Assembly: GCA_964057225.1 (NCBI GenBank)
Contig: OZ059896.1
Span: forward strand, 9,424,001 to 9,488,000
Length of the DNA: 64,000 nt
Direction: 5' to 3'
DNA from: Auanema rhodensis
Taxonomy: Eukaryota > Animalia > Nematoda
Notes under the pieces: generated by a model
Database searches by the model: none
What the model was told of the DNA's origin: nothing
Seen by the model: only the letters and a program-made list of their open reading frames with translations
Shown here: positions 1 to 62,505 of the stretch, piece by piece
How positions within the stretch are numbered: position 1 is the stretch's first letter
Layout: each line of letters begins with the position of its first letter
Program-made: the position numbers and the translations under genes

Positions 1-110
1 TTACAGTACCGTGTCACTGTATGTTTTATCGATAAACTTCATTTTTCCTATTGACCACTAGTTTGTTGGAGTCCAATTCATCTGGCGCCATGTATGCTAG
101 CACATCATAA

Positions 111-183
111 GGTCTTGTGGTGTAGTGGTTATCACGTCTGCTTTACACGCAGAAGGTCGTCGGTTCGAACCCGGCCAAGACCT
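111..183 (+). tRNA. tRNA-Val(TAC), first complete copy (representative)
   Basis: GGTCTTGTGGTGTAGTGGTTATCACGTCTGCTTTACACGCAGAAGGTCGTCGGTTCGAACCCGGCCAAGACCT. Anticodon TAC at 144-146; U50.G64 wobble pair in the T-stem. Confidence 0.97.
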
Positions 184-187
184 GTTC

Positions 188-191
188 TTTT
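188..191 (+). terminator. Pol III terminator (TTCTTTT; T4 tract), repeated in nearly every unit
   Basis: T4 run starts 5 nt after the discriminator base. Further T4-T5 runs in the spacer (GATTTT, GTTTT, CTTTT/ATTTTT) could act as back-ups. Confidence 0.7.
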
Positions 192-2027
192 GAAGGATTT
201 TAATCCAAAATCATCAGAGTACCGTGTCACTGTATGTTTTATCGATAAACTTCATTTTTCCTATTGACCACTAGTTTGTTGGAGTCCAATTCATCTGGCG
301 CCATGTATGCTAGCACATCATAAGGTCTTGTGGTGTAGTGGTTATCACGTCTGCTTTACACGCAGAAGGTCGTCGGTTCGAACCCGGCCAAGACCTGTTC
401 TTTTGAAGGATTTTAATCCAAAATCATTAGAGTACCGTGTCACTGTATGTTTTATCGATAAACTTCATTTTTCCTATTGACCACTAGTTTGTTGGAGCCC
501 AATTGATCTGGCGCCATGTATGCTAGCACATCATAAGGTCTTTTGGTGTAGTGGTTATCACGTCTGCTTTACACGCAGAAGGTCGTCGGTTCGAACCCGG
601 CCAAGACCTGTGCTTTTGAAGGATTTTAGTCCAAAATCATTAGAGTACCGTGTCACTGTATGTTTTATCGATAAACTACACTTTTCCTATTGACCACTAG
701 TTTGTTGGAGTCCAATTCATCTGGCGCCATGTATGCTAGCACATCATAAGGTCTTGTGGTGTAGTGGTTATCACGTCTGCTTTACACGCAGAAGGTCGTC
801 GGTTCGAACCCGGCCAAGACCTGTGCTTTTGAAGGATTTTAGTCCAAAATCATAAGAGTACCGTCTCACTGTATGTTTTATCGATAAACTACATTTTTCC
901 TATTGTACACTAGTTTGTTGGAGCCCAATTGATCTGGCGCCATGTATGCTAGCACATCATAAGGTCTTGTGGTGTAGTGGTTATCACGTCTGCTTTACAC
1001 GCAGAAGGTCGTCGGTTCGAACCCGGCCAAGACCTGTTCTTTTGAAGGATTTTAATCCAAAATCATCAGAGTACCGTGTCACTGTATGTTTTATCGATAA
1101 ACTACATTTTTCCTATTGACCACTAGTTTGTTGGAGCCCAATTGATCCGGCGCCATGTATGCTAGCACATCATAAGGTCTTGTGGTGTAGTGGTTATCAC
1201 GTCTGCTTTACACGCAGAAGGTCGTCGGTTCGAACCCGGCCAAGACCTGTTCTTTTGAAGGATTTTAATCCAAAATCATCACAGTACCGTGTCACTGTAT
1301 GTTTTATCGATAAACTACACTTTTCCTATTGACCACTAGTTTGTTGGAGCCCAATTGATCTGGCGCCATGTATGCTACCACATCATAAGGTCTTGTGGTG
1401 TAGTGGTTATCACGTCTGCTTTACACGCAGAAGGTCGTCGGTTCGAACCCGGCCAAGACCTGTTCTTTTGAAGGAATTTAATCCAAAATCATTAGAATAC
1501 CGTGTCACTGTATGTTTTATCGATAAACTACATTTTTCCTATTGACCACTAGTTTGTTGGAGCCCAATTGATCCGGCGCCATGTATGCTAGCACATCATA
1601 AGGTCTTGTGGTGTAGTGGTTATCACGTCTGCTTTACACGCAGAAGGTCGTCGGTTCGAACCCGGCCAAGACCTGTTCTTTTGAAGGATTTTAATCCAAA
1701 ATCATCAGAGTACCGTGTCACTGTATGTTTTATCGATAAACTACATTTTTCCTATTGACCACTAGTTTGTTGGAGCCCAATTGATCTGGCGCCATGTATG
1801 CTAGGAGATCATAAGGTCTTGTGGTGTAGTGGTTATCACGTCTGCTTTACACGCAGAAGGTCGTCGGTTCGAACCCGGCCAAGACCTGTTCTTTTGAAGG
1901 ATTTTAATCCAAAATCATAAGAGTACCGTCTCACTGTATGTTTTATCGATAAACTACACTTTTCCTATTGACCACTAGTTTGTTGGAGTCCAATTCATCT
2001 GACGCCACGTTTGCTAGCACATCATAA

Positions 2028-2100
2028 GGTCTTGTGGTGTAGTGGTTATCACGTCTGCTTCACACGCAGAAGGTCGCCGGTTCGAACCCGGCCAAGACCT
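2028..2100 (+). tRNA. tRNA-Val(CAC), first copy of the second isoacceptor (representative)
   Basis: Same body as the TAC copies, but anticodon CAC at 2061-2063 and T-stem GCCGG/CCGGC (C50-G64). Confidence 0.96.
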
Positions 2101-5100
2101 GTGCTTTTGAAGGATTTTAGTCCAAAATCATTAGAGTACCGTGTCACTGTATGTTTTATCGATAAACTACACTTTTCCTATTGACCACTAGTTTGTTGGA
2201 GTCCAATTCATCTGGCGCCACGTTTGCTAGCACATCATAAGGTCTTGTGGTGTAGTGGTTATCACGTCTGCTTTACACGCAGAAGGTCGTCGGTTCGAAC
2301 CCGGCCAAGACCTGTTCTTTTGAAGGATTTTAATCCAAAATCATCACAGTACCGTGTCACTGTATGTTTTATCGATAAATTACACTTTTCCTATTGACCA
2401 CTAGTTTGTTGGAGCCCAATTGATCTGGCGCCATGTATGCTACCACATCATAAGGTCTTGTGGTGTAGTGGTTATCACGTCTGCTTCACACGCAGAAGGT
2501 CGCCGGTTCGAACCCGGCCAAGACCTGTTCTTTTGAAAGATTTTAATCCAAAATCATTACAGTACCGTGTCAATGTATGTTTTATCGATAAACTACATTT
2601 TTCCTATTGACCACTAGTTTGTTGGAGCCCAATTGATCTGGCGCCATGTATGCTAGCACATCATAAGGTCTTGTGGTGTAGTGGTTATCACGTCTGCTTT
2701 ACACGCAGAAGGTCGTCGGTTCGAACCCGGCCAAGACCTGTTCTTTTGAAGGATTTTAATCCAAAATCATTAGAGTACCGTGTCACTGTATGTTTTATCG
2801 ATAAACTACATTTTTCCTATTGACCACTAGTTTGTTGGAGCCCAATTGATCTGGCGCCATGTATGCTAGCACATCATAAGGTCTTGTGGTGTAGTGGTTA
2901 TCACGTCTGCTTTACACGCAGAAGGTCGTCGGTTCGAACCCGGCCAAGACCTGTTCTTTTGAAGGATTTTAATACAAAATCATCAGAGTACCGTGTCACT
3001 GTATGTTTTATCGATAAACTACACTTTTCCTATTGACCACTAGTTTGTTGGAGCCCAATTGATCTGGCGCCATGTATGCTACCACATCATAAGGTCTTGT
3101 GGTGTAGTGGTTATCACGTCTGCTTTACACGCAGAAGGTCGTCGGTTCGAACCCGGCCAAGACCTGTTCTTTTGAAGGATTTTAATCCAAAATCATCAGA
3201 GTACCGTGTCACTGTATGTTTTATCGATAAACTACACTTTTCCTATTGACCACTAGTTTGTTGGAGCCCAATTGATCTGGCGCCATGTATGCTAGCACAT
3301 CATAAGGTCTTGTGGTGTAGTGGTTATCACGTCTGCTTCACACGCAGAAGGTCGCCGGTTCGAACCCGGCCAAGACCTGTTCTTTTGAAGGATTTTAATC
3401 CATAATCATCACAGTACCGTGTCACTGTATGTTTTATCGATAAACTACATTTTTCCTATTGACCACTAGTTTGTTGGAGTCCAATTCATCTGACGCCATG
3501 TATGCTAGGAGATCATAAGGTCTTGTGGTGTAGTGGTTATCACGTCTGCTTTACACGCAGAAGGTCGTCGGTTCGAACCCGGCCAAGACCTGTTCTTTTG
3601 AAGGATTTTAATCCAAAATCAAAAGAGTACCGTCTCACTGTATGTTTTATCGATAAACTACACTTTTCCTATTGACCACTAGTTTGTTGGAGTCCAATTC
3701 ATCTGACGCCACGTTTGCTAGCACATCATAAGGTCTTGTGGTGTAGTGGTTATCACGTCTGCTTCACACGCAGAAGGTCGCCGGTTCGAACCCGGCCAAG
3801 ACCTGTGCTTTTGAAGGATTTTAGTCCAAAATCATTAGAGTACCGTGTCACTGTATGTTTTATCGATAAACTACACTTTTCCTATTGACCACTAGTTTGT
3901 TGGAGTCCAATTCATCTGGCGCCACGTTTGCTAGCACATCATAAGGTCTTGTGGTGTAGTGGTTATCACGTCTGCTTCACACGCAGAAGGTCGCCGGTTC
4001 GAACCCGGCCAAGACCTGTGCTTTTGAAGGATTTTAGTCCAAAATCATAAGAGTACCGTCTCACTGTATGTTTTATCGATAAACTAAATTTTTCCTATTG
4101 TACACTAGTTTGTTGGAGCCCAATTGATCTGGCGCCATGTATGCTACCACATTATAAGGTCTTGTGGTGTAGTGGTTATCACGTCTGCTTTACACGCAGA
4201 AGGTCGTCGGTTCGAACCCGGCCAAGACCTGTTCTTTTGAAGGATTTTAATCCAAAATCATAAGAGTACCGTCTCACTGTATGTTTTATCGATAAACTAC
4301 ATTTTTCCTATTGAACACTAGTTTGTTGGAGCCCAATTGATCTGGCGCCATGTATGCTAGGACATCATAAGGTCTTGTGGTGTAGTGGTTATCACGTCTG
4401 CTTTACACGCAGAAGGTCGTCGGTTCGAACCCGGCCAAGACCTGTTCTTTTGAAGGATTTTAATCCAAAATCATCAGAGTACCGTGTCACTGTATGTTTT
4501 ATCGATAAACTACATTTTTCCTATTGAACACTAGTTTGTTGGAGCCCAATTGATCTGGCGCCATGTATGCTAGCACGTCATAAGGTCTTGTGGTGTAGTG
4601 GTTATCACATCTGCTTTACACGCAGAAGGTCGTCGGTTCGAACCCGGCCAAGACCTGTTCTTTTGAAGGATTTTAATCCAAAATCATCACAGTACCGTGT
4701 CACTGTATGTTTTATCGATAAACTACACTTTTCCTATTGACCACTAGTTTGTTGGAGCCCAATTGATCTGGCGCCATGTATGCTACTACATCATAAGGTC
4801 TTGTGGTGTAGTGGTTATCACGTCTGCTTCACACGCAGAAGGTCGCCGGTTCGAACCCGGCCAAGACCTGTTCTTTTGAAAGATTTTAATCCAAAATCAT
4901 TACAGTACCGTGTCAATGTATGTTTTATCGATAAACTACATTTTTCCTATTGACCACTAGTTTGTTGGAGCCCAATTGATCTGGCGCCATGTATGCTAGC
5001 ACATCATAAGGTCTTGTGGTGTAGTGGTTATCACGTCTGCTTTACACGCAGAAGGTCGTCGGTTCGAACCCGGCCAAGACCTGTTCTTTTGAAGGATTTT

Positions 5101-8100
5101 AATCCAAAATCATTAGAGTACCGTGTCACTGTATGTTTTATCGATAAACTACATTTTTCCTATTGACCACTAGTTTGTTGGAGCCCAATTGATCTGGCGC
5201 CATGTATGCTACCACATCATAAGGTCTTGTGGTGTAGTGGTTATCACGTCTGCTTTACACGCAGAAGGTCGTCGGTTCGAACCCGGCCAAGACCTGTTCT
5301 TTTGAAGGATTTTAATCCAAAATCATTACAGTACCGTGTCACTGTATGTTTTATCGATAAACTACACTTTTCCTATTGACCACTAGTTTGTTGGAGCCCA
5401 ATTGATCTGGCGTCATGTTTGCCAGCTTATCATAAGGTCTTGTGGTGTAGTGGTTATCACGTCTGCTTTACACGCAGAAGGTCGTCGGTTCGAACCCGGC
5501 CAAGACCTGTTCTTTTGAAGGATTTTAGTCCAAAATCATTAGAGTACCTTGTCACTGTATGTTTTATCGATAAACTACATTTTTCCTATTGACCACTAGT
5601 TTGTTGGAGCCCAATTGATCTGGCGCCATGTATGCTAGCACATCATAAGGTCTTGTGGTGTAGTGGTTATCACGTCTGCTTTACACGCAGAAGGTCGTCG
5701 GTTCGAACCCGGCCAAGACCTGTTCTTTTGAAGGATTTTAATCCAAAATCATCACAGTACCGTGTCACTGTATGTTTTATCAATAAACTACACTTTTCCT
5801 ATTGACCACTAGTATGTTGGAGCCCAATTGATCTGGCGCCATGTATGCTACCTCATCATAAGGTCTTGTGGTGTAGTGGTTATCACGTCTGCTTTACACG
5901 CAGAAGGTCGTCGGTTCGAACCCGGCCAAGACCTGTTCTTTTGAAGGATTTTAATCCAAAATCATCAGAGTACCGTGTAACTGTATGTTTCATCGATAAA
6001 CTACATTTTTCCTATTGACCACTAGTTTGTTGGAGTCCAATTCATCTGGCGCCACGTTTGCTAGCACATCATAAGGTCTTGTGGTGTAGTGCTTATCACG
6101 TCTGCTTTACACGCAGAAGGTCGTCGGTTCGAACCCGGCCAAGACCTGTTCTTTTGAAGGATTTTAATCCAAAATCATTACAGTACCGTGTCACTGTATG
6201 TTTTATCGATAAACTACACTTTTCCTATTGACCACTAGTTTGTTGGAGTCCAATTCATCTGCCGCCACGTTTGCCAGCTTATCATAAGGTCTTGTGGTGT
6301 AGTGGTTATCACGTCTGCTTCACACGCAGAAGGTCGCCGGTTCGAACCCGGCCAAGACCTGTTCTTTTGAAGGATTTCAATCCAAAATCATCAGAGTCCC
6401 GTGTCACTGTATGTTTTATCGATAAACTACACTTTTCCTATTGACCACTAGTATGTTGGAGCCCAATTGATCTGGCGCCATGTATGCTACCACATCATAA
6501 GGTCTTGTGGTGTAGTGGTTATCACGTCTGCTTTACACGCAGAAGGTCGTCGGTTCGAACCCGGCCAAGACCTGTTCTTTTGAAGGATTTTAATCCAAAA
6601 TCATCAGAGTACCGTGTCACTATATGTTTTATCGATAAACTACACTTTTCCTATTGACCACTAGTTTGTTGGAGTCCAATTCATCTGCCGCCACGTTTGC
6701 CAGCTTATCATAAGGTCTTGTGGTGTAGTGGTTATCACGTCTGCTTCACACGCAGAAGGTCGCCGGTTCGAACCCGGCCAAGACCTGTTCTTTTGAAGGA
6801 TTTCAATCCAAAATCATCAGAGTCCCGTGTCACTGTATGTTTTATCGATAAACTACACTTTTCCTATTGACCACTAGTATGTTGGAGCCCAATTGATCTG
6901 GCGCCATGTATGCTACCACATCATAAGGTCTTGTGGTGTAGTGGTTATCACGTCTGCTTTACACGCAGAAGGTCGTCGGTTCGAACCCGGCCAAGACCTG
7001 TTCTTTTGAAGGATTTTAATCCAAAATCATCAGAGTACCGTGTCACTATATGTTTTATCGATAAACTACATTTTTCCTATTGACCACTAGTTTGTTGGAG
7101 CCCAATTGATCTGGCGCCATGTATGCTAGGACATCATAAGGTCTTGTGGTGTAGTGGTTATCACGTCTGCTTTACACGCAGAAGGTCGTCGGTTCGAACC
7201 CGGCCAAGACCTGTTCTTTTGAAGGATTTTAATCCAAAATCATCAGAGTACCGTGTCACTGTATGTTTTATCGATAAACTACATTTTTCCTATTGACCAC
7301 TAGTTTGTTGGAGCCCAATTGATCTGGCGCCATGTATGCTAGGACATCATAAGGTCTTGTGGTGTAGTGGTTATCACGTCTGCTTTACACGCAGAAGGTC
7401 GTCGGTTCGAACCCGGCCAAGACCTGTTCTTTTGAAAGATTTTAATCCAAAATCATCAGAGTACCGTGTCACTGTATGTTTTATCGATAAACTACATTTT
7501 TCCTATTGACCACTAGTTTGTTGGAGTCCAATTCATCTGACGCCACGTTTGCTAGCACATCATAAGGTCTTGTGGTGTAGTGGTTATCACGTCTGCTTCA
7601 CACGCAGAAGGTCGCCGGTTCGAACCCGGCCAAGACCTGTTCTTTTGAAGGATTTTAATACATAATCATCACAGTACCGTGTCACTGTATGTTTTATCGA
7701 TAAACTACACTTTTCCTATTGACCACTAGTTTGTTGGAGCCCAATTGATCTGACGCCACGTTTGCTAGCACATCATAAGGTCTTGTGGTGTAGTGGTTAT
7801 CACGTCTGCTTTACACGCAGAAGGTCGTCGGTTCGAACCCGGCCAAGACCTGTTCTTTTGAAGGATTTTAATCCAAAATCATCAGACTACCGTGTCACTG
7901 TATGTTTTATCGATAAACTACACTTTTCCTATTAACCACTAGTATGTTGGAGCCCAATTGATCTGGCGCCATGTATGCCACCACATCATAAGGTCTTGTG
8001 GTGTAGTGGTTATCACGTCTGCTTTACACGCAGAAGGTCGTCGGTTCGAACCCGGCCAAGACCTGTTCTTTTAAAGGATTTTAATCCAAAATCATTACAG

Positions 8101-11100
8101 TACCGTGTCACTGTATGTTTTATCGATAAACTACACTTTTCCTATTGACCACTAGTTTGTTGGAGTCCAATTCATCTGGCGCCACGTTTGCTAGCACATC
8201 ATAAGGTCTTGTGGTGTAGTGGTTATCACGTCTGCTTCACACGCAGAAGGTCGCCGGTTCGAACCCGGCCAAGACCTGTTCTTTTGAAGGATTTTAATCC
8301 AAAATCATCACAGTACCGTGTCACTGTATGTTTTATCGATAAACTACACTTTTCCTATTGACCACTAGTTTGTTGGAGCCCAATTGATCTGACGCCACGT
8401 TTGCTAGCACATCATAAGGTCTTGTGGTGTAGTGGTTATCACGTCTGCTTTACACGCAGAAGGTCGTCGGTTCGAACCCGGCCAAGACCTGTTCTTTTGA
8501 AGGATTTTAATCCAAAATCATCAGACTACCGTGTCACTGTATGTTTTATCGATAAACTACACTTTTCCTATTGACCACTAGTATGTTGGAGCCCAATTGA
8601 TCTGGCGCCATGTATGCCACCACATCATAAGGTCTTGTGGTGTAGTGGTTATCACGTCTGCTTTACACGCAGAAGGTCGTCGGTTCGAACCCGGCCAAGA
8701 CCTGTTCTTTTAAAGGATTTTAATCCAAAATCATCAGAGTACCGTGTCACTGTATGTTTTATCGATAAACTACACTTTTCCTATTGACCACTAGTTTGTT
8801 GGAGTCCAATTCATCTGGCGCCACGTTTGCTAGCACATCATAAGGTCTTGTGGTGTAGTGGTTATCACGTCTGCTTTACACGCAGAAGGTCGTCGGTTCG
8901 AACCCGGCCAAGACCTGTTCTTTTGAAGGATTTTAATCCAAAATCATCAGAGTACCGTGTCACTGTATGTTTTATCGATAAACTACATTTTTCCTATTGA
9001 ACACTAGTTTGTTGGAGCCCAATTGATCTGGCGCCATGTATGCTAGCACGTCATAAGGTCTTGTGGTGTAGTGGTTATCACATCTGCTTTACACGCAGAA
9101 GGTCGTCGGTTCGAACCCGGCCAAGACCTGTTCTTTTGAAGGATTTTAGTCCAAAATCATTAGAGTACCTTGTCACTGTATGTTTTATCGATAAACTACA
9201 TTTTTCCTATTGACCACTAGTTTGTTGGAGCCCAATTGATCTGGCGCCATGTATGCTAGCACATCATAAGGTCTTGTGGTGTAGTGGTTATCACGTCTGC
9301 TTTACACGCAGAAGGTCGTCGGTTCGAACCCGGCCAAGACCTGTTCTTTTGAAGGATTTTAATCCAAAATCATTACAGTACCGTGTCACTGTATGTTTTA
9401 TCGATAAACTACACTTTTCCTATTGACCACTAGTTTGTTGGAGCCCAATTGATCTGGCGTCATGTTTGCCAGCTTATCATAAGGTCTTGTGGTGTAGTGG
9501 TTATCACGTCTGCTTTACACGCAGAAGGTCGTCGGTTCGAACCCGGCCAAGACCTGTTCTTTTGAAGGATTTTAGTCCAAAATCATTAGAGTACCTTGTC
9601 ACTGTATTTTTTATCGATAAACTACATTTTTCCTATTGACCACTAGTTTGTTGGAGCCCAATTGATCTGGCGCCATGTATGCTAGCACATCATAAGGTCT
9701 TGTGGTGTAGTGGTTATCACGTCTGCTTTACACGCAGAAGGTCGTCGGTTCGAACCCGGCCAAGACCTGTTCTTTTGAAGGATTTTAATCCAAAATCATC
9801 ACAGTACCGTGTCACTGTATGTTTTATCAATAAACTACACTTTTCCTATTGACCACTAGTATGTTGGAGCCCAATTGATCTGGCGCCATGTATGCTACCA
9901 CATCATAAGGTCTTGTGGTGTAGTGGTTATCACGTCTGCTTTACACGCAGAAGGTCGTCGGTTCGAACCCGGCCAAGACCTGTTCTTTTGAAGGATTTTA
10001 ATCCAAAATCATCAGAGTCCCGTGTCACTGTATGTTTTATCGATAAACTACACTTTTCCTATTGACCACTAGTATGTTGGAGCCCAATTGATCTGGCGCC
10101 ATGTATGCTACCACATCATAAGGTCTTGTGGTGTAGTGGTTATCACGTCTGCTTTACACGCAGAAGGTCGTCGGTTCGAACCCGGCCAAGACCTGTTCTT
10201 TTGAAGGATTTTAATCCAAAATCATCAGAGTACCGTGTCACTGTATGTTTCATCGATAAACTACATTTTTCCTATTGACCACTAGTTTGTTGGAGTCCAA
10301 TTCATCTGGCGCCACGTTTGCTAGCACATCATAAGGTCTTGTGGTGTAGTGCTTATCACGTCTGCTTTACACGCAGAAGGTCGTCGGTTCGAACCCGGCC
10401 AAGACCTGTTCTTTTGAAGGATTTTAATCCAAAATCATTACAGTACCGTGTCACTGTATGTTTTATCGATAAACTACACTTTTCCTATTGACCACTAGTT
10501 TGTTGGAGTCCAATTCATCTGCCGCCACGTTTGCCAGCTTATCATAAGGTCTTGTGGTGTAGTGGTTATCACGTCTGCTTCACACGCAGAAGGTCGCCGG
10601 TTCGAACCCGGCCAAGACCTGTTCTTTTGAAGGATTTTAATCCAAAATCATCAGAGTACCGTGTCACTGTATGTTTTATCGATAAAATACATTTTTCCTA
10701 TTGACCACTAGTTTGTTGGAGCCCAATTGATCTGGCGCCATGTATGCTACCACATCATAAGGTCTTGTGGTGTAGTGGTTATCACGTCTGCTTTACACGC
10801 AGAAGGTCGTCGGTTCGAACCCGGCCAAGACCTGTTCTTTTGAAGGATTTTAATCCAAAATCATCAGACTACCGTGTCACTGTATGTTTTATCGATAAAC
10901 TACACTTTTCCTATTGACCACTAGTATGTTGGAGCCCAATTGATCTGGCGCCATGTATGCTACCACATCATAAGGTCTTGTGGTGTAGTGGTTATCACGT
11001 CTGCTTTACACGCAGAAGGTCGTCGGTTCGAACCCAGCCAAGACCTGTTCTTTTGAAGGATTTTAATCCAAAATCATCAGAGTACCGTGTCACTGTATGT

Positions 11101-35100: not shown

Positions 35101-35520
35101 ACCCGGCCAAGACCTGTTCTTTTGAAGGATTTTAGTCCAAAATCATTAGAGTACCGTGTCACTGTATGTTTTATCGATAAACTACACTTTTTCTATTGAT
35201 CACTAGTTTGTTGGATCCCAATTGATCTGGCGCCATGTTTGCCAGTTTATCATAAGGTCTTGTGGTGTAGTGGTTATCACGTCTGCTTCACACGCAGAAG
35301 GTCGCCGGTTCGAACCCGGCCAAGACCTGTTCTTTTGAAGGATTTTAATCCAAAATCATTACAGTACCGTGTCACTGTATGTTTTATCGATAAACTACAC
35401 TTTTCCTATTGACCACTAGATTGTTGGAGCCCAATTGATCTGGCGCCATGTATGCTAGCACATCATAAGGTCTTGTGGTGTAGTGGTTATCACGTCTGCT
35501 TTACACGCAGAAGGTCGTCG
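26150..35520 (+). repeat. Higher-order tandem duplication of 22 units (period 4686 bp); boundaries approximate
   Basis: Rare variants recur 4686 bp apart: ATACAAAA 27041/31727, TCACTCTATG 29626/34312, TGATCAC 30511/35197. Confidence 0.85.
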
Positions 35521-40100: not shown

Positions 40101-41030
40101 ACTAGTTTGTTGGATCCCAATTGATCTGGCGCCATGTTTGCCAGTTTATCATAAGGTCTTGTGGTGTAGTGGTTATCACGTCTGCTTCACACGCAGAAGG
40201 TCGCCGGTTCGAACCCGGCCAAGACCTGTTCTTTTGAAGGATTTTAATCCAAAATCATTACAGTACCGTGTCACTGTATGTTTTATCGATAAACTACACT
40301 TTTCCTATTGACCACTAGATTGTTGGAGCCCAATTGATCTGGCGCCATGTATGCTAGCACATCATAAGGTCTTGTGGTGTAGTGGTTATCACGTCTGCTT
40401 CACACGCAGAAGGTCGCCGGTTCGAACCCGGCCAAGACCTGTTCTTTTGAAGGATTTTAGTCCAAAATCATTAGAGTACCGTGTCACTGTATGTTTTATC
40501 GATAAACTACACTTTTTCTATTGACCACTAGTTTGTTGGATCCCAATTGATCTGGCGCCATGTTAGCCAGTTTATCATAAGGTCTTGTGGTGTAGTGGTT
40601 ATCACGTCTGCTTCACACGCAGAAGGTCGCCGGTTCGAACCCGGCCAAGACCTGTTCTTTTGAAGGATTTTAGTCCAAAATCATTAGAGTACCGTGTCAC
40701 TGTATGTTTTATCGATAAACTACATTTTTCCTATTGACCACTAGTTTGCTGGAGCCCAATTGATCTGGCGCCATGTATGCTAGCACATCATAAGGTCTTG
40801 TGGTGTAGTGGTTATCACGTCTGCTTCACACGCAGAAGGTCGCCGGTTCGAACCCGGCCAAGACCTGTTCTTTTGAAGGATTTTAATCCAAAATCATTAG
40901 AGTACCGTGTCACTGTATGTTTTATCGATAAACTACACTTTTCCTATTGACCACTAGTTTGTTGGATCCCAATTGATCTGGCGCCATGTATGCTAGCACA
41001 TCATAAGGTCTTGTGGTGTAGTGGTTATCA
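37170..41030 (+). repeat. Higher-order duplication with a 10-unit period (2130 bp); boundaries approximate
   Basis: Rare variants recur 2130 bp apart: 37551/39681, 37841/39971, 38431/40561, 38611/40741. Confidence 0.85.
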
Positions 41031-44000
41031 CGTCTGCTTTACACGCAGAAGGTCGTCGGTTCGAACCCGGCCAAGACCTGTTCTTTTGAAGGATTTTAGT
41101 CCAAAATCATTAGAGTACCGTGTCACTGTATGTTTTATCGATAAACTACACTTTTCCTATTGAGCACTAGTTTGTTGGAGCCCAATTGATCTGGCGCCAT
41201 GTATGCTAGCACATCATAAGGTCTTGTGGTGTAGTGGTTATCACGTCTGCTTTACACGCAGAAGGTCGTCGGTTCGAACCCGGCCAAGACCTGTTCTTTT
41301 GAAGGATTTTAGTCCAAAATCATTAGAGTACCGTGTCACTGTATGTTTTATCGATAAACTACATTTTTCCTATTGACCACTAGTTTGTTGGAGCCCAATT
41401 GATCTGGCGCCATGTATGCTAGCACATCATAAGGTCTTGTGGTGTAGTGGTTATCACGTCTGCTTCACACGCAGAAGGTCGCCGGTTCGAACCCGGCCAA
41501 GACCTGTTCTTTTGAAGGATTTTAATCCAAAATCATTAGAGTACCGTGTCACTGTATGTTTTATCGATAAACTACACTTTTCCTATTGACCACTAGATTG
41601 TTGGATCCCAATTGATCTGGCGCCATGTATGCTAGCACGTCATAAGGTCTTGTGGTGTAGTGGTTATCACGTCTGCTTTACACGCAGAAGGTCGTCGGTT
41701 CGAACCCGGCCAAGACCTGTTCTTTTGAAGGATTTTAGTCCAAAATCATTAGAGTACCGTGTCACTGTATGTTTTATCGATAAACTACACTTTTCCTATT
41801 GAGCACTAGTTTGTTGGAGCCCAATTGATCTGGCGCCATGTATGCTAGCACATCATAAGGTCTTGTGGTGTAGTGGTTATCACGTCTGCTTTACACGCAG
41901 AAGGTCGTCGGTTCGAACCCGGCCAAGACCTGTTCTTTTGAAGGATTTTAGTCCAAAATCATTAGAGTACCGTGTCACTGTATGTTTTATCGATAAACTA
42001 CATTTTTCCTATTGACCACTAGTTTGTTGGAGCCCAATTGATCTGGCGCCATGTATGCTAGCACATCATAAGGTCTTGTGGTGTAGTGGTTATCACGTCT
42101 GCTTCACACGCAGAAGGTCGCCGGTTCGAACCCGGCCAAGACCTGTTCTTTTGAAGGATTTTAATCCAAAATCATTAGAGTACCGTGTCACTGTATGTTT
42201 TATCGATAAACTACACTTTTCCTATTGACCACTAGATTGTTGGATCCCAATTGATCTGGCGCCATGTATGCTAGCACATCACAAGGTCTTGTGGTGTAGT
42301 GGTTATCACGTCTGCTTTACACGCAGAAGGTCGTCGGTTCGAACCCGGCCAAGACCTGTTCTTTTGAAGGATTTTAGTCCAAAATCATTAGAGTACCGTG
42401 TCACTGTATGTTTTATCGATAAACTACACTTTTCCTATTCAGCACTAGTTTGTTGGAGCCCAATTGATCTGGCGCCATGTATGCTAGCACATCATAAGGT
42501 CTTGTGGTGTAGTGGTTATCACGTCTGCTTTACACGCAGAAGGTCGTCGGTTCGAACCCGGCCAAGACCTGTTCTTTTGAAGGATTTTAGTCCAAAATCA
42601 TTAGAGTACCGTGTCACTGTATGTTTTATCGATAAACTACACTTTTCCTATTGACCACTAGATTGTTGGAGCCCAATTGATCTGGCGCCATGTATGCTAG
42701 CACATCATAAGGTCTTGTGGTGTAGTGGTTATCACGTCTGCTTTACACGCAGAAGGTCGTCGGTTCGAACCCGGCCAAGACCTGTTCTTTTGAAGGATTT
42801 TAGTCCAAAATCATTAGAGTACCGTGTCACTGTATGTTTTATCGATAAACTACATTTTTCCTATTGACCACTAGTTTGTTGGAGCCCAATTGATCTGGCG
42901 CCATGTATGCTAGCACATCGTAAGGTCTTGTGGTGTAGTGGTTATCACGTCTGCTTCACACGCAGAAGGTCGCCGGTTCGAACCCGGCCAAGACCTGTTC
43001 TTTTGAAGGATTTTAATCCAAAATCATTAGAGTACCGTGTCACTGTATGTTTTATCGATAAACTACACTTTTCCTATTGACCACTAGATTGTTGGAGCCC
43101 AATTGATCTGGCGCCATGTATGCTAGCACATCATAAGGTCTTGTGGTGTAATGGTTATCACGTCTGCTTCACACGCAGAAGGTCGCCGGTTCGAACCCGG
43201 CCAAGACCTGTTCTTTTGAAGGATTTTAATCCAAAATCATTAGAGTACCGTGTCACTGTATGTTTTATCGATAAACTACACTTTTCCTATTGACCACTAG
43301 TTTGTTGGATCCCAATTGATCTGGCGCCATGTATGCTAGCACATCATAAGGTCTTGTGGTGTAGTGGTTATCACGTTTGCTTTACACGCAGAAGGTCGTC
43401 GGTTCGAACCCGGCCAAGACCTGTTCTTTTGAAGGATTTTAGTCCAAAATCATTAGAGTACCGTGTCACTGTATGTTTTATCGATAAACTACACTTTTCC
43501 TATTGAGCACTAGTTTGTTGGAGCCCAATTGATCTGGCGCCATGTATGCTAGCACATCATAAGGTCTTGTGGTGTAGTGGTTATCACGTCTGCTTTACAC
43601 GCAGAAGGTCGTCGGTTCGAACCCGGCCAAGACCTGTTCTTTTGAAGGATTTTAGTCCAAAATCATTAGAGTACCGTGTCACTGTATGTTTTATCGATAA
43701 ACTACACTTTTTCTATTGACCACTAGTTTGTTGGATCCCAATTGATCTGGCGCCATGTTTGCCAGTTTATCATAAGGTCTTGTGGTGTAGTGGTTATCAC
43801 GTCTGCTTCACACGCAGAAGGTCGCCGGTTCGAACCCGGCCAAGATCTGTTCTTTTGAAGGATTTTAATCCAAAATCATTACAGTACCGTGTCACTGTAT
43901 GTTTTATCGATAAACTACACTTTTCCTATTGACCACTAGATTGTTGGAGCCCAATTGATCTGGCGCCATGTATGCTAGCACATCATAAGGTCTTGTGGTG

Positions 44001-47000
44001 TAGTGGTTATCACGTCTGCTTTACACGCAGAAGGTCGTCGGTTCGAACCCGGCCAAGACCTGTTCTTTTGAAGGATTTTAGTCCAAAATCATTAGAGTAC
44101 CGTGTCACTGTATGTTTTATCGATAAACTACATTTTTCCTATTGACCACTAGTTTGTTGGAGCCCAATTGATCTGGCGCCATGTATGCTAGCACATCATA
44201 AGGTCTTGTGGTGTAGTGGTTATCACGTCTGCTTCACACGCAGAAGGTCGCCGGTTCGAACCCGGCCAAGACCTGTTCTTTTGAAGGATTTTAATCCAAA
44301 ATCATTAGAGTACCGTGTCACTGTATGTTTTATCGATAAACTACACTTTTCCTATTGACCACTAGATTGTTGGATCCCAATTGATCTGGCGCCATGTATG
44401 CTAGCACATCATAAGGTCTTGTGGTGTAGTGGTTATCACGTCTGCTTTACACGCAGAAGGTCGTCGGTTCGAACCCGGCCAAGACCTGTTCTTTTGAAGG
44501 ATTTTAGTCCAAAATCATTAGAGTACCGTGTCACTGTATGTTTTATCGATAAACTACACTTTTCCTATTGAGCACTAGTTTGTTGGAGCCCAATTGATCT
44601 GGCGCCATGTATGCTAGCACATCATAAGGTCTTGTGGTGTAGTGGTTATCACGTCTGCTTTACACGCAGAAGGTCGTCGGTTCGAACCCGGCCAAGACCT
44701 GTTCTTTTGAAGGATTTTAATCCAAAATCATTAGAGTACCGTGTCACTGTATGTTTTATCGATAAACTACACTTTTCCTATTGACCACTAGATTGTTGGA
44801 TCCCAATTGATCTGGCGCCATGTATGCTAGCACATCATAAGGTCTTGTGGTGTAGTGGTTATCACGTCTGCTTTACACGCAGAAGGTCGTCGGTTCGAAC
44901 CCGGCCAAGACCTGTTCTTTTGAAGGATTTTAATCCAAAATCATTAGAGTACCGTGTCACTGTATGTTTTATCGATAAACTACACTTTTCCTATTGACCA
45001 CTAGATTGTTGGATCCCAATTGATCTGGCGCCATGTATGCTAGCACATCACAAGGTCTTGTGGTGTAGTGGTTATCACGTCTGCTTTACACGCAGAAGGT
45101 CGTCGGTTCGAACCCGGCCAAGACCTGTTCTTTTGAAGGATTTTAGTCCAAAATCATTAGAGTACCGTGTCACTGTATGTTTTATCGATAAACTACACTT
45201 TTCCTATTGAGCACTAGTTTGTTGGAGCCCAATTGATCTGGCGCCATGTATGCTAGCACATCATAAGGTCTTGTGGTGTAGTGGTTATCACGTCTGCTTT
45301 ACACGCAGAAGGTCGTCGATTCGAACCCGGCCAAGACCTGTTCTTTTGAAGGATTTTAGTCCAAAATCATTAGAGTACCGTGTCACTGTATGTTTTATCG
45401 ATAAACTACACTTTTCCTATTGACCACTAGATTGTTGGAGCCCAATTGATCTGGCGCCATGTATGCTAGCACATCATAAGGTCTTGTGGTGTAGTGGTTA
45501 TCACGTCTGCTTTACACGCAGAAGGTCGTCGGTTCGAACCCGGCCAAGACCTGTTCTTTTGAAGGATTTTAGTCCAAAATCATTAGAGTACCGTGTCACT
45601 GTATGTTTTATCGATAAACTACATTTTTCCTATTGACCACTAGTTTGTTGGAGCCCAATTGATCTGGCGCCATGTATGCTAGCACATCATAAGGTCTTGT
45701 GGTGTAGTGGTTATCACGTCTGCTTCACACGCAGAAGGTCGCCGGTTCGAACCCGGCCAAGACCTGTTCTTTTGAAGGATTTTAATCCAAAATCATTACA
45801 GTACCGTGTCACTGTATGTTTTATCGATAAACTACACTTTTCCTATTGACCACTAGATTGTTGGAGCCCAATTGATCTGGCGCCATGTATGCTAGCACAT
45901 CATAAGGTCTTGTGGTGTAGTGGTTATCACGTCTGCTTTACACGCAGAAGGTCGTCGGTTCGAACCCGGCCAAGACCTGTTCTTTTGAAGGATTTTAGTC
46001 CAAAATCATTAGAGTACCGTGTCACTGTATGTATTATCGATAAACTACACTTTTCCTATTGAGCACTAGTTTGTTGGAGCCCAATTGATCTGGCGCCATG
46101 TATGCTAGCACATCATAAGGTCTTGTGGTGTAGTGGTTATCACGTCTGCTTTACACGCAGAAGGTCGTCGGTTCGAACCCGGCCAAGACCTGTTCTTTTG
46201 AAGGATTTTAGTCCAAAATCATTAGAGTACCGTGTCACTGTATGTTTTATCGATAAACTACACTTTTTCTATTGACCACTAGTTTGTTGGATCCCAATTG
46301 ATCTAGCGCCATGTTTGCCAGTTTATCATAAGGTCTTGTGGTGTAGTGGTTATCACGTCTGCTTCACACGCAGAAGGTCGCCGGTTCGAACCCGGCCAAG
46401 ACCTGTTCTTTTGAAGGATTTTAGTCCAAAATCATTAGAGTACCGTGTCACTGTATGTTTTATCGATAAACTACATTTTTCCTATTGACCACTAGTTTGT
46501 TGGAGCCCAATTGATCTGGCGCCATGTATGCTAGCACATCATAAGGTCTTGTGGTGTAGTGGTTATCACGTCTGCTTCACACGCAGAAGGTCGCCGGTTC
46601 GAACCCGGCCAAGACCTGTTCTTTTGAAGGATTTTAATCCAAAATCATTAGAGTACCGTGTCACTGTATGTTTTATCGATAAACTACACTTTTCCTATTG
46701 ACCACTAGTTTGTTGGATCCCAATTGATCTGGCGCCATGTATGCTAGCACATCATAAGGTCTTGTGGTGTAGTGGTTATCACGTCTGCTTTACACGCAGA
46801 AGGTCGTCGGTTCGAACCCGGCCAAGACCTGTTCTTTTGAAGGATTTTAGTCCAAAATCATTAGAGTACCGTGTCACTGTATGTTTTATCGATAAACTAC
46901 ACTTTTCCTATTGAGCACTAGTTTGTTGGAGCCCAATTGATCTGGCGCCATGTATGCTAGCACATCATAAGGTCTTGTGGTGTAGTGGTTATCACGTCTG

Positions 47001-48674
47001 CTTTACACGCAGAAGGTCGTCGGTTCGAACCCGGCCAAGACCTGTTCTTTTGAAGGATTTTAGTCCAAAATCATTAGAGTACCGTGTCACTGTATGTTTT
47101 ATCGATAAACTACACTTTTTCTATTGACCACTAGTTTGTTGGATCCCAATTGATCTGGCGCCATGTTTGCCAGTTTATCATAAGGTCTTGTGGTGTAGTG
47201 GTTATCACGTCTGCTTCACACGCAGAAGGTCGCCGGTTCGAACCCGGCCAAGACCTGTTCTTTTGAAGGATTTTAATCCAAAATCATTAGAGTACCGTGT
47301 CACTGTATGTTTTATCGATAAACTACACTTTTCCTATTGACCACTAGATTGTTGGAGCCCAATTGATCTGGCGCCATGTATGCTAGCACATCATAAGGTC
47401 TTGTGGTGTAGTGGTTATCACGTCTGCTTTACACGCAGAAGGTCGTCGGTTCGAACCCGGCCAAGACCTGTTCTTTTGAAGGATTTTAGTCCAAAATCAT
47501 TAGAGTACCGTGTCACTGTATGTTTTATCGATAAACTACATTTTTCCTATTGACCACTAGTTTGTTGGAGCCCAATTGATCTGGCGCCATGTATGCTAGC
47601 ACATCATAAGGTCTTGTGGTGTAGTGGTTATCACGTCTGCTTCACACGCAGAAGGTCGCCGGTTCGAACCCGGCCAAGACCTGTTCTTTTGAAGGATTTT
47701 AATCCAAAATCATTAGAGTACCGTGTCACTGTATGTTTTATCGATAAACTACACTTTTCCTATTGACCACTAGATTGTTGGAGCCCAATTGATCTGGCGC
47801 CATGTATGCTAGCACATCATAAGGTCTTGTGGTGTAGTGGTTATCACGTCTGCTTTACACGCAGAAGGTCGTCGGTTCGAACCCGGCCAAGACCTGTTCT
47901 TTTGAAGGATTTTAGTCCAAAATCATTAGAGTACCGTGTCACTGTATGTTTTATCGATAAACTACACTTTTCCTATTGACCACTAGATTGTTGGAGCCCA
48001 ATTGATCTGGCGCCATGTATGCCAGTTTATCATAAGGTCTTGTGGTGTAGTGGTTATCACGTCTGCTTCACACGCAGAAGGTCGCCGGTTCGAACCCGGC
48101 CAAGACCTGTTCTTTTGAAGGATTTTAGTCCAAAATCATTAGAGTACCGTGTCACTGTATGTTTTATCGATAAACTACATTTTTCCTATTGACCACTAGT
48201 TTGTTGGAGCCCAATTGATCTGGCGCCATGTATGCTAGCACATCATAAGGTCTTGTGGTGTAGTGGTTATCACGTCTGCTTTACACGCAGAAGGTCGTCG
48301 GTTCGAACCCGGCCAAGACCTGTTCTTTTGAAGGATTTTAGTCCAAAATCATTAGAGTACCGTGTCACTGTATGTTTTATCGATAAACTACACTTTTCCT
48401 ATTGAGCACTAGTTTGTTGGAGCCCAATTGATCTGGCGCCATGTATGCTAGCACATCATAAGGTCTTGTGGTGTAGTGGTTATCACGTCTGCTTTACACG
48501 CAGAAGGTCGTCGGTTCGAACCCGGCCAAGACCTGTTCTTTTGAAGGATTTTAATCCAAAATCATTAGAGTACCGTGTCACTGTATGTTTTATCGATAAA
48601 CTACACTTTTTCTATTGACCACTAGTTTGTTGGATCCCAATTGATCTGGCGCCATGTTTGCCAGTTTATCATAA

Positions 48675-48747
48675 GGTCTTGTGGTGTAGTGGTTATCACG
48701 TCTGCTTCACACGCAGAAGGTCGCCGGTTCGAACCCGGCCAAGACCT
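48675..48747 (+). tRNA. tRNA-Val(CAC), terminal intact copy of the array
   Basis: Full cloverleaf, anticodon CAC, followed by a diverged spacer. Confidence 0.95.
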
Positions 48748-48748
48748 G

Positions 48749-48755
48749 TTTTTTT
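48749..48755 (+). terminator. T7 Pol III terminator of the last tRNA copy
   Basis: GTTTTTTTAAAG replaces the internal GTTCTTTTGAAG. Confidence 0.75.
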
Positions 48756-48902
48756 AAAGAATTTTCATTTAAAAACCAGGGGGTACAATAGTACAGTAAG
48801 TTTTTGTTCAAACCCGGATAAGACCTGTCTTTTTAAAATAATTCAATCCAAAAAATCGTGAAAGATACTATAGCAATAGATTTTGATAACCTACTCCGTT
48901 TT
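48756..48902 (+). pseudogene. Degenerate array-edge relic: diverged spacer, then a 3'-half tRNA fragment (48806-48826) and a second diverged spacer
   Basis: GTTCAAACCCGGATAAGACCTGTCTTTTTAAAATAATTCAATCCAAAAAATC..GATAACCTAC aligns by eye to GTTCGAACCCGGCCAAGACCTGTTCTTTTGAAGGATTTTAATCCAAAATC..GATAAACTAC. Confidence 0.85.
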
Positions 48903-48958
48903 AGTATTCTAGTTATTATTTTGTTATTTATTGTTTCGGGAGGAAAAAGTAGTCGTAC

Positions 48959-51900
48959 CTGTAACATTCATCTGTTGTATTGGTATTCCATTTTCCACAT
49001 GAGTATCCCATACTAAATTTCTTTATTTTGTATTTTCAAATATACTATATTCTTACTTTCGTCGCCACAAGTGTCAATTTCGGGAGCGTATACTTCTCCG
49101 TAAAGCATAAAATAGGGTTTGTAAAAAATATTTCTAAGAAGAATCCAGTGCCAGTCCTCATATGGAAATGTAATAGATTGTCGTATAACTCCAAAAGCCA
49201 GCAATGCAACAGAAAGCATACATAGTATAGGTAACATCCTGGGAATCTGTAGTTTTTTGAAAGTATGAATTCTATCTGTGGGAACTTTTACCATTTCTGA
49301 TGCCATCGTTACGTAAGGTCCTAATTGTCGATGAACACTGAGATAATCTACCAATTTTAAGCACCAGAGTACCCAATTCGATGCTAACATGACACGTCCT
49401 ATTGCTCTAAATCCCGTTCTTAAACATTAGCTGTGAATATATCTTACCTTGTTCCAGGATTCAATCGAATTATGAAACCTATGACATAAATGCTTAAAGC
49501 CACAGCCAAAATTCCATTACGGTAGTTAAAAAAAAATATGCTAAGTTTACGAAATATAGGCTTCTTAGTATCAACCATAACAATGAGTAACATCTAAATG
49601 TTCTTTGAATGAAAGCTATACTAACCCATTTTTAAACAGTTTATACCTTACGAAAGACTTCAATACTCCATACAACTGCGTATAAAAACAAATACCATTC
49701 GACCCAAGAAGGCATTCTATATAATTATGAATTTATATATTATATAATAGTATATCTTTACCTAGGGGTTTCTACTAGAAGAACATATGTGAGACCAATA
49801 AGAAATATAAAATAACTAACAGACCAGAGCCAAAACGTAGTAATCGGGGCTGTATAAAATTCGCGCAGTTTTCTTCTCCAGTTTAACGAGTTCTAAATTC
49901 CTTTTCCTTGTCATATTTTAATATGCATAAATACCTGTTTTGTTTGTCGTTCCTCTTCTTTGTCTTTTTTACTTTCTACAACATATGCGCCACCATCATT
50001 ACTGTTAGCAAAAACAACCACATGCTTCTGTGTTGAACGTCTCTTAACTTTATCTGAAAAATAGTCTACTTTTGTTTTTCTCTAAATATTTGTCTTACTC
50101 TGGTTGCAATCATCAGCTACATCAGTCATAGTTTCGAGATCTTTACGCATTAATCGCTTGCGAACTTTGGAAGTTGAAATTGTTCGAGATCGCCCAGGCT
50201 TGGCTATAATTTCACTTTTATACTAACTATTTTTAACAGTCTACTAACTTGAAACATCACCATTTACAGTTGGAGGTGAGTTAGATGATGCTGGGGCTAC
50301 TGTATCTCTACGAAAGAGCACTTTGTCCATCATTAACTTTTAAAAAAATTGTAGATAATCAAAGTCAATACATGTGCACATACCTGATGAAAACTCAGAG
50401 GTTGCTCAGAACCACTACGAGTTCTCGTGTTAGCACTGGCTTCATCCTGAAACAAACATATTATACAAAAGGCTATATCATAAACTCAACACCTCATCAG
50501 TGTCAGTGCTAGCAATATCAGAAAAATCATCAGAGCTATCTGTCATACTTCCATCGCTTTCCCAGTTTTCTTCATGATGTTCCGCCGCTGTATGTGGTTG
50601 TAACTTCAATTCTTCTTTCGATTTAAATTCCAACAGGAATATAGCAGGAGGTACCAAAAGACAAGACAAAACCTAAAACAACGTATTTGTAAAACAACGT
50701 TTACATTTGACATATTTTATACTTTTATATTTGAGCTATTTCTTATATGAAGAGCACCATGCCATAAATCGGAAAGTAGTAATTGACAGCTATAAATGGA
50801 AAATTTCATTTTAAAGCTTTCTGAATGGAGTAGATTTTACCATGGATGTGCTAGAAATTTCCTATTTTGATCCAATGCCGCCAATGATAAACATGTTTCA
50901 TTTCCCCAATTTGTTAATTCATAAGTTAATAATTGTAGAGTGGAATCAACATTTTGAGAAGAACAATATTGTAAAACTTCAATAGATAAATGACGAAATT
51001 CTCTGAAAGGATTAATCATGCATGTTTTAATATTTGAATATGCTTACTCGCTGTTTTTGCTTAGCTCCTCACATATTTCTAGTTCTAAATAATTAGTAGA
51101 AGCATCTGAGGCTAAAGAAGAGTACAGGCGACATGCAATAAGAGCCTATAATGAACAACAATGTGAGCAATTTTCAGAAAAGTGTAACTAGCCTTGGCCA
51201 TAGCTTCTTCTCCATGTCTCCACATAAGCATAGCCATATCTTGCCGTTTCGTCAGAACAGACCAGATAAGAAGTTCGGAATATGGATATTTAAAAGTAAA
51301 ATCTAATGATTCATCCTCAGTCAAGGAGCGATCGTCTGAAATCGGCGAATTTTTGAGTGATGGTTGAAGGGGTGTGGAACAAGGACAATCCAAACCTAAA
51401 CACAAGAAGCTATACAAGACGAAGACCAACAAAGTAACATATATAGTAACAAACAATTAAAGTCTATAGTGATTTAAAACATGATACATAGTATCAACAT
51501 ATATTCTACCGTCTTGGTCTAAATTTCTTTCCCGACTACCACCCTGGAAAATCGAAATAATAGAATGGCGAGCTGTTTTCAATAAATCCAATCGTAATGT
51601 TTCTTCCTTCAAATTTTCCGATCGTTGTCTAACTTTGGAATTTTCTGATTTGTGCTGATAGTTCAGCTAAATTATTAAAATATAAAATATAAAATTGAAT
51701 AATATAAACCTGTTTGCGATTACTAAACACAAAATATTTAGCTTTAAAATCTTCTTTGGTATAATTAGATTTATATGCATTTCCCATTAGATTCTCCATG
51801 ACATGTCCAACCTAAAAATTATAGTACACTGTAGAATTATAAAACTAGAATACTTCTGTGAGCTTCAGCTGATGCTTCTTGGAACCTGCTCCTAACAAGC

Positions 51901-54796: not shown

Positions 54797-54802
54797 CTGA
54801 AA
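54797..54802 (-). promoter_or_regulatory. TTTCAG splice / trans-splice acceptor 6 nt upstream of the TRPM ATG
   Basis: Minus strand reads GTTTCAG|AAAACA ATG GCT. Confidence 0.6.

Positions 54803-55675: not shown

Positions 55676-55683
<8 letters not shown>

Positions 55684-55708
<25 letters not shown>
55684..55708. repeat. (AT)n microsatellite
   Basis: About 12 AT dinucleotides. Confidence 0.9.
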
Positions 55709-62504: not shown

Positions 62505-62505
62505 A

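What the first reader, a model, noticed from the sequence alone, without database searches (positions are those of the whole stretch)
1..49012. A >=48.9-kb antisense tRNA-Val array appears to fill one giant intron in the pore region of a TRPM channel gene
Seen: the minus-strand TRPM frame is intact over about 33 exons with mostly 41-50 bp introns. Its last visible exon (49012-48959, [19 protein letters not shown]) ends at G|gtacga, a donor type also used in cpsf-3 in this window. Read-through hits TAA after 11 codons. The next ~200 bp are mostly degenerate array, followed by 229 tRNA genes on the opposite strand. Known: every TRPM needs the remaining pore Cys, the S6 helix, TRP box and coiled coil, and none of these is in the window. 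Inference: those exons lie beyond the array, making the intron about 1000x the local norm and made of Pol III genes. Pol II would have to cross hundreds of head-on tRNA genes and would produce a long antisense-tRNA repeat RNA. That could impose a transcription delay, couple channel expression to Pol III state or copy number, and feed dsRNA/siRNA pathways. It resembles the satellite-filled giant introns of Drosophila Y fertility genes, but is built from intact tRNA genes. I do not know of a described equivalent.
Basis: partly seen in the sequence, partly recalled or inferred. Interest (0 to 1): 0.93.

Follow-up and report, generated by a model that had tools for sequence, protein, structure and literature searches.

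The report
Giant intron built of tRNA genes
In a nematode (most likely Auanema rhodense), an ion-channel gene intron that is about 45-50 bases long in related worms has been swollen to about 50,000 bases by roughly 250 head-to-tail, opposite-strand copies of an intact-looking valine tRNA gene, and RNA data show that the channel message is still correctly spliced across it.

Summary
Window 1-48774 is a 213-bp tandem array of 229 tRNA-Val genes on the + strand. They score 67-68 bits in Rfam and carry anticodons TAC or CAC. The array abuts the last visible exon (49012-48959, minus strand) of a GTL-1-type TRPM gene.

The exon ends at a phase-1 intron position shared with Auanema sp. JU1783 (45 nt) and C. 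elegans gtl-1 (50 nt). Neither relative has a tRNA in or near its gene.

Spliced RNA contigs from three runs of one study match the window exons exactly. All three leave the genome at 48958 and continue with sequence coding GDTCVPGYFVV, identical to the next exon of the JU1783 orthologue. They run on for 981 nt. That sequence is absent from the window.

An independent DNA contig confirms the exon-to-array junction.

The scan found similar intronic tRNA arrays before on other DNA of this genome, and a 2026 preprint reports 19,554 tRNA loci. Effects on transcription or small RNAs are untested.

The parts
1..48774 (+). Tandem array of 229 tRNA-Val genes. The unit is 213 bp: a 73-nt tRNA plus a 140-bp spacer with a T-run terminator. 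By anticodon, 151 of the 228 aligned copies are TAC and 77 are CAC. The array runs off the left end of the window.
   Evidence: ARAGORN; TRF; Rfam tRNA 67-68 bits; unit statistics
26117..35560 (+). Exact internal duplication within the array: 26117-30874 equals 30803-35560, 4,758 bp at an offset of 22 units. It marks either recent unequal exchange or an assembly artefact.
   Evidence: unit labels; exact comparison
48806..48925 (+). Degenerate, truncated edge unit: the 3' part of the tRNA (GTTCAAACCCGGATAAGACCTG) plus diverged spacer.
   Evidence: Local alignment to the unit consensus scores 36 against a shuffle maximum of 18
48926..48958 (-). Donor-proximal 33 nt of the giant intron that are not array-like. 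The GT donor is at 48958-48957.
   Evidence: Sequence; RNA contigs leave the genome at 48958
48959..49012 (-). Last TRPM exon in the window (pore loop; ...[17 protein letters not shown], ends in phase 1). It equals P0158 residues 1267-1285.
   Evidence: tblastn; RNA joint 49012/49057 and loose end at 48958; translation
48959..54741 (-). 5' part of the GTL-1-type TRPM gene (SLOG domain, TRPM2 domain, S1-S5 and pore loop), about 32 exons. The start codon at 54741 is provisional. Exons below 51510 are fixed by listed RNA joints.
   Evidence: RNA contigs with 31 joints and 0 other letters; model; Pfam; homology
51146..51192 (-). 47-nt GC..AG intron of the TRPM gene.
   Evidence: RNA joint 51142-51190 with 5 ambiguous letters resolved on the sequence; it keeps the frame

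Best explanation
A single, formerly about 45-50-nt phase-1 intron in the pore region of the gtl-1-type TRPM gene acquired a tRNA-Val gene in antisense orientation. That gene, with its spacer, was then amplified in place by unequal exchange or replication slippage. The result is a homogenised 213-bp array: 229 copies in the window and about 249 in all if the neighbouring note is right. This turned the intron into one of at least 48.96 kb, probably about 53 kb.

It is one local case of the genome-wide amplification of tRNA genes in what is most likely Auanema rhodense.

The host gene is not broken. Pol II transcripts are spliced from the donor at 48959|48958 to the S6-coding exon beyond the array, giving a normal full-length TRPM mRNA of about 4.9 kb.

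- Shown: the array, the junction, the conserved intron site, use of the donor, and the identity of the joined exon.
- Inferred: that the joined exon lies at the far edge of the same array, that splicing is in cis after transcription through the whole array, how the array was amplified, and that the tRNA copies are functional.
For: - Array anatomy.
- Concerted evolution: older, degenerate units sit at the edge and exact multi-unit duplications lie inside.
- Intron homology: JU1783 has ACA G|gt...45 nt...ag|GAGACACATGTGTGCCCGG. C. elegans has an intron of 50 nt at the same position and phase. Neither locus has a tRNA.
- RNA: contigs of 4899, 4907 and 4659 nt match the window exons with 0 other letters. 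Each has a loose end at 48958 whose reverse complement reads in frame as GDTCVPGYFVV, equal to P0158 residues 1285-1295, and continues for 981 nt (about 327 codons, the size of the missing C-terminus).
- The 30-nt loose-end sequence shown by read laying, which begins that next exon, does not occur in the window at up to 3 mismatches.
- DNA contig X8, from another study, runs unbroken from 48721 to 50141, crossing from the exon through the relic unit into the last tRNA. It shows no joint that skips the array.
- Synteny (cpsf-3 / zf-C2H2 / kelch / TRPM) is the same as in JU1783.
- The antisense strand of the array has 0 TTTCAG, 0 GTAAGT and 1 AATAAA, so it offers few decoy splice or poly(A) signals.
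- Rare variants are 3.2 times sparser in the tRNA than in the spacer (18 against 110, Fisher p 3e-7), which fits selection on the tRNA.
- Genome context: 19,554 tRNA loci are reported for A. rhodense. Earlier notes of this scan describe other intronic tRNA arrays in this genome.
Against: - I could not read the DNA left of the window. That the S6 exon sits at the far edge of this array rests on an unchecked first-reader note (s1-391330).
- All RNA evidence comes from one study and from assembled contigs, not raw reads. It cannot show transcription through the array or tell cis-splicing from trans-splicing.
- The copy number depends on the assembly. Exact 4.76-kb internal duplicates could be assembly artefacts.
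- Expression of the tRNA copies was not tested. They carry U73 where tRNA-Val usually has A73 (my own knowledge).
- The species is inferred, not proven. Run organisms are coded, and the closest protein in the database is from another Auanema species, at 64.5% tblastn identity (77% by blastp on a rough model).
Confidence: 0.8

Rival explanations
1. Assembly artefact. A few tRNA-Val units really sit in the intron, but a 49-53-kb array from elsewhere was collapsed or placed here, so the true intron is much shorter.
For: Copy number is supported only by the assembly itself. The periodicity is perfect with 0% indels, and there are exact duplicates of 4,758 bp and 2,343 bp. Short-read contigs end inside the first repeat.
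Against: An independent DNA contig confirms the exon-to-array junction and shows no alternative path at 48958. The edge units are degenerate, as expected of a native array border. Many comparable arrays are reported in this genome.
Confidence: 0.07
2. Two transcription units joined by exon-exon trans-splicing. The 5' half is transcribed up to the array and the 3' half from a promoter beyond it, so Pol II never has to cross the roughly 250 head-on tRNA genes.
For: Nothing direct. RNA contigs only show the joined product. Nematodes have very active trans-splicing machinery (my own knowledge).
Against: The intron is an ordinary conserved cis-intron in relatives. Exon-exon trans-splicing is rare. 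Contig depth is uniform across the junction, although contig depth is a weak measure.
Confidence: 0.06
3. The window copy is a truncated pseudogene, and the spliced mRNA comes from another, array-free copy or allele. That could include a somatic version from which the array has been removed.
For: A. rhodense eliminates about two thirds of its germline DNA, including some tRNA arrays. RNA cannot tell identical exons of two copies apart.
Against: RNA contigs match the window with 0 differences over about 3.9 kb. The DNA contig crosses 48958 without a branch, and no DNA joint skips the array. Reported elimination works by breakage and telomere addition at 28 motif-marked sites, not by precise excision. 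The window carries conserved syntenic genes such as cpsf-3, typical of retained DNA.
Confidence: 0.04

Closest known systems
Nested intronic tRNA genes of Caenorhabditis (Wang & Ruvinsky 2012, PMC3342880; Sagi et al. 2016, PMC4999229)
   Same: [quoted passage not shown] About 44% are on the opposite strand. Gains and losses usually leave the host gene intact.
   Different: In C. elegans there is usually one tRNA per intron. Here about 250 tandem copies enlarge the intron about 1000-fold. The orthologous intron in C. elegans and Auanema JU1783 has no tRNA.
Tandem tRNA-gene arrays
   Same: Head-to-tail amplification of an intact tRNA gene with its spacer. The tRNA part is better conserved than the spacer. 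The array shows higher-order duplications.
   Different: The preprint does not mention introns or host genes. This array lies wholly inside a spliced intron of an expressed channel gene and mixes two anticodons.
Gigantic satellite-filled introns of Drosophila Y-linked fertility genes (e.g. PMC11207136)
   Same: An intron more than 1000 times the typical size, filled by tandem repeats, is still transcribed and spliced to give a normal mRNA.
   Different: The repeat here is a Pol III gene in head-on orientation, not a simple satellite. The size is tens of kb, not Mb. The host is an autosomal-type channel gene in a genome whose introns are about 45 nt. No dedicated factors are known.
GTL-1 / GON-2 / GTL-2 TRPM channels of C. 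elegans
   Same: Orthogroup of GTL-1 (P0154): SLOG and TRPM2 domains, conserved pore-loop sequence, and the same intron position.
   Different: Only the gene architecture differs. The protein looks ordinary.

Membership tests
TRPM channel, GTL-1 orthogroup | N-terminal SLOG (LSDAT_euk) and TRPM2-like homology domains | tested here: met
   Pfam LSDAT_euk 97.2 bits on 53335-53700(-); TRPM2 40.9 bits on 50840-51043(-)
TRPM channel, GTL-1 orthogroup | Best full-length relatives are GTL-1 orthologues, with conserved gene neighbourhood | tested here: met
   P0158 (Auanema sp. JU1783) is the top hit, followed by the GTL-1 cluster P0004/P0154. The cpsf-3 / zf / kelch / TRPM order is the same as in L001.
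TRPM channel, GTL-1 orthogroup | Complete pore module: S5, pore loop, S6, then TRP box and C-terminal region | tested here: inconclusive
   S5 and the pore loop are in the window (phmmer E 9e-46). Pfam Ion_trans was not detected on that fragment. Only the first 11 residues after the junction (GDTCVPGYFVV) were seen in RNA. A further roughly 950 nt exist in the contigs but could not be read.
Functional Pol III tRNA gene | Cloverleaf that scores as tRNA | tested here: met
   Rfam RF00005 67-68 bits against a gathering score of 29, full length 1-71. ARAGORN calls all 229 copies tRNA-Val.
Functional Pol III tRNA gene | Internal A and B boxes and a downstream T-run terminator | tested here: met
   Read from the consensus unit: TGGTGTAGTGG (A box), GGTTCGAACC (B box), and TTCTTTT starting 2 nt after the tRNA. 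The consensus motifs are from my own knowledge.
Functional Pol III tRNA gene | Expression and aminoacylation; the usual Val identity element A73 | not tested
   No small-RNA data were laid. The copies carry U73. The lower rare-variant density in the tRNA than in the spacer is indirect support only.
Giant repeat-filled intron (Drosophila Y-loop type) | One intron orders of magnitude longer than the gene's other introns and than its orthologous intron | tested here: met
   At least 48,958 nt, against 41-53 nt for 14 of the 15 listed introns and 45-50 nt for the orthologous intron.
Giant repeat-filled intron (Drosophila Y-loop type) | The mature mRNA joins the flanking exons | tested here: met
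   Three RNA contigs join 48959 to the S6 exon sequence. The genomic position of that exon was not seen here.
Giant repeat-filled intron (Drosophila Y-loop type) | Continuous transcription through the repeats | not testable with these tools

The most novel reading that the evidence does not exclude
The roughly 250 intronic tRNA-Val genes are active Pol III units. Pol II must run head-on through all of them to make the channel mRNA. TRPM output would then depend on Pol III activity, chromatin state or array copy number. The long antisense-tRNA intron RNA would pair with pre-tRNAs and feed nematode small-RNA pathways. This would be a natural, copy-number-variable Pol II/Pol III conflict device inside an essential-type ion-channel gene.
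Probability: 0.15. Interest if true: 0.85.

Novelty: new variant of a known kind. Interest (0 to 1): 0.6.

Why it matters
The finding shows that a compact, short-intron nematode gene can tolerate a 1000-fold expansion of one intron by hundreds of opposite-strand Pol III genes and still produce a correctly spliced mRNA. That gives a natural substrate for asking several questions:

- How does Pol II cope with massed head-on tRNA genes, or how are those genes silenced?
- How does the nematode spliceosome pair sites 50 kb apart?
- How do the tRNA arrays of Auanema rhodense arise and turn over?

It also matters for annotation. Gene finders with a maximum intron length will split such genes in two. 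I found no full-length or N-terminal model of this gene in the protein databases.

Tried and rejected
- De novo splice-graph models without RNA guidance gave wrong long introns. I replaced them with RNA-joint-constrained and homologue-guided mapping. The part above 51510 is still rough.
- I searched two protein databases for this species' own TRPM model, which would have shown how annotators treat the array. None was present.
- I looked for tRNA genes in the orthologous loci of Auanema JU1783 and C. elegans, as a possible ancestral seed. There were none.
- A by-sequence look-up of earlier notes for the far-side exons returned nothing.
- I considered programmed DNA elimination as a way to remove the array in the soma. 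I rejected it as unlikely because the reported mechanism is breakage with telomere healing at 28 motif sites, and the DNA contig shows no deletion joint.
- I considered the absence of TTTCAG on the antisense strand as evidence of selection. I rejected that, because a 213-bp unit lacks any given hexamer about 95% of the time. It is mechanistically relevant but not statistically unusual.
Full report
**The array.** ARAGORN finds 229 tRNA-Val genes on the + strand from 110 to 48748, each exactly 213 bp from the next. TRF reports a single array at 1-48765 with period 213, 228.9 copies, 96% matches and no indels. G+C is 0.43 in the array against 0.26-0.38 in the flank. Rfam scores the copies it scanned at 67-68 bits over the full tRNA model, as 73-nt tRNAs.

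The consensus unit carries an A box, a B box and a TTCTTTT run 2 nt after the tRNA (the motif consensus is my own knowledge). There are 121 distinct units but only 22 distinct tRNA sequences. Two isoacceptors dominate. Val(TAC) accounts for 151 of the 228 aligned copies and Val(CAC) for 77. The anticodon base is linked to T or C at tRNA position 50, which gives U50-G64 or C50-G64.

Rare variants are 3.2 times sparser in the tRNA than in the spacer (18 against 110, Fisher p 3e-7). The array contains exact multi-unit duplications. For example, 26117-30874 equals 30803-35560, which is 4,758 bp at an offset of 22 units. This is the signature of recent unequal exchange, unless it is an assembly artefact.

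**The host gene.** On the minus strand from about 54741 to 48959 lies the 5' part of a TRPM gene. Pfam finds LSDAT_euk at 97 bits and the TRPM2 domain at 41 bits. A HMMER search with the S5-pore piece returns nematode TRPMs.

The closest full-length protein is P0158 of Auanema sp. JU1783, at 64.5% tblastn identity over 17 HSPs (77% by blastp against a rough model). It belongs to the group of C. elegans GTL-1, P0154. The window covers P0158 from about residue 51 to 1285. Nothing in the window matches residues 1288-1612, which hold S6, the TRP box and the C-terminus.

Gene order (cpsf-3, zf-C2H2, kelch, TRPM) is the same as in the JU1783 contig.

**The junction.** The last exon, 49012-48959, encodes ...[17 protein letters not shown] and ends in phase 1 before gtacga. 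Read-through stops after 11 codons.

Downstream, 33 nt of unique sequence are followed by a degenerate, truncated array unit at 48806-48925 (score 36 against a shuffle maximum of 18). A partial spacer and the first intact tRNA, at 48675-48747, come next. The array therefore reaches almost to the splice donor.

**The intron is ancient and normally tiny.** In JU1783 the orthologous exon ends ACA G|gt. After 45 nt the next exon starts ag|GAGACACATGTGTGCCCGG. In C. elegans gtl-1 the same phase-1 intron is 50 nt. Neither locus contains a tRNA gene.

**RNA evidence.** Fifteen public runs hold the gene. Four of them, from one 2019 study, hold only 46-47% of its words, as spliced cDNA would. I laid three of these plus one DNA run from another study on 48766-54760.

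Each RNA run gives one long contig (4899, 4907 and 4659 nt). Each contig has 31 joints, all on the minus strand, and no differing letters. The 15 listed introns are 41-53 nt, with one of 174 nt. One intron is GC..AG, at 51192-51146.

All three contigs have a loose end at 48958. The reverse complement of the loose letters, read in frame after ...AATGTTACAGG, gives GDTCVPGYFVV. This is identical to P0158 residues 1285-1295, the start of the next exon. The contigs continue for 981 nt beyond the junction, about the size of the missing C-terminus. The 30-nt sequence is absent from the whole window even with 3 mismatches.

So the donor is used. It is joined to the S6 exon, and that exon is not within the 48.9 kb downstream.

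**DNA evidence.** A DNA contig of run X8 runs unbroken from 48721 to 50141. It crosses from the exon over the relic unit into the last tRNA, and no DNA joint skips the array. This argues against a mis-join at the boundary and against a common array-free allele.

**The far side.** I could not read DNA left of the window. An earlier first-reader note (s1-391330) on the overlapping previous window reports at least 29 tRNA-Val genes nested antisense in an apparent TRPM intron, over 6,268 letters ending at my position 2000. Nine of those genes are in my window.

This is unchecked, but it fits the RNA result.

**Genome context.** Earlier follow-ups in this scan identified the genome as probably Auanema rhodense. 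They describe many tRNA arrays, including intronic ones: tRNA-Ala in a nicotinic receptor gene and tRNA-Arg in papilin. So the scan has found this kind of thing before on other DNA.

I checked the cited preprint. It reports 19,554 tRNA loci, only 215 of them pseudogenes. [quoted passage not shown] It says nothing about introns or host genes.

The 2019 short-read assembly of the species had 32.2% G+C and only about 500 tRNA loci. That fits the window's composition and suggests the arrays were collapsed in that assembly.

In C. elegans, 43% of tRNA genes are nested in introns, usually one per intron. About 44% are antisense to the host, and host promoters influence them.

**Interpretation.** The most likely history is a lineage-specific landing of one antisense tRNA-Val gene in a 45-50-nt intron, followed by in-place tandem amplification and homogenisation. 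The edges are degenerate and the interior is near-identical with higher-order duplicates.

The host gene remains functional and is spliced across the array. The antisense strand of the array has no TTTCAG, no GTAAGT and a single AATAAA. It therefore offers few decoy signals. This may help correct splicing but is not statistically unusual for a 213-bp unit.

The following remain open:
- whether the tRNA copies are active;
- whether Pol II really traverses them in cis;
- whether this delays or tunes channel expression;
- whether it produces small RNAs.

Rival readings are an inflated assembly, trans-splicing of two units, or another array-free copy. Each has evidence against it, and none is fully excluded.

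**Verdict.** This is a new variant of known kinds: nested nematode tRNA genes, tandem tRNA arrays and repeat-filled giant introns. It is one striking member of a genome-wide pattern, not a unique device.

Noticed in passing
window 51146-51192 (-): A GC..AG intron (47 nt) in the TRPM gene, used in all three RNA contigs. A GT two bases downstream would break the frame.
   Followed up: yes
window 26117-35560 and 12355-17253 (+): Exact multi-unit duplications inside the array: 4,758 bp at an offset of 22 units, and 11 identical units at an offset of 12. They reflect very recent unequal exchange or an assembly artefact.
   Followed up: partly
every array unit, e.g. window 48675-48747 (+): The tRNA-Val copies have U at the discriminator position 73. 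ARAGORN instead draws an 8-bp acceptor stem with G as discriminator. tRNA-Val normally has A73 (my own knowledge), so charging identity may be unusual.
   Followed up: no
array unit positions 144 and 160 (tRNA positions 34 and 50): Anticodon TAC or CAC is linked to T or C at T-stem position 50. Three copies are recombinant. CAC copies are rarer in the left half (25 of the first 120) than in the right (53 of the last 109).
   Followed up: partly
window 58400-64000 (+): Kelch-type, Q-rich C2H2 zinc-finger and cpsf-3 (CPSF73-like) genes lie in the same order as next to the TRPM orthologue of Auanema sp. JU1783. About 3.6 kb of very AT-rich DNA (G+C 0.26-0.30) at 54800-58400 separates the diverging TRPM and kelch genes.
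   Followed up: partly
array antisense strand, window 1-48958 (-): ATTAAA occurs in about half of the units (125 times) on the strand transcribed with the TRPM gene, while AATAAA occurs once. Whether these act as premature poly(A) sites is unknown.
   Followed up: no
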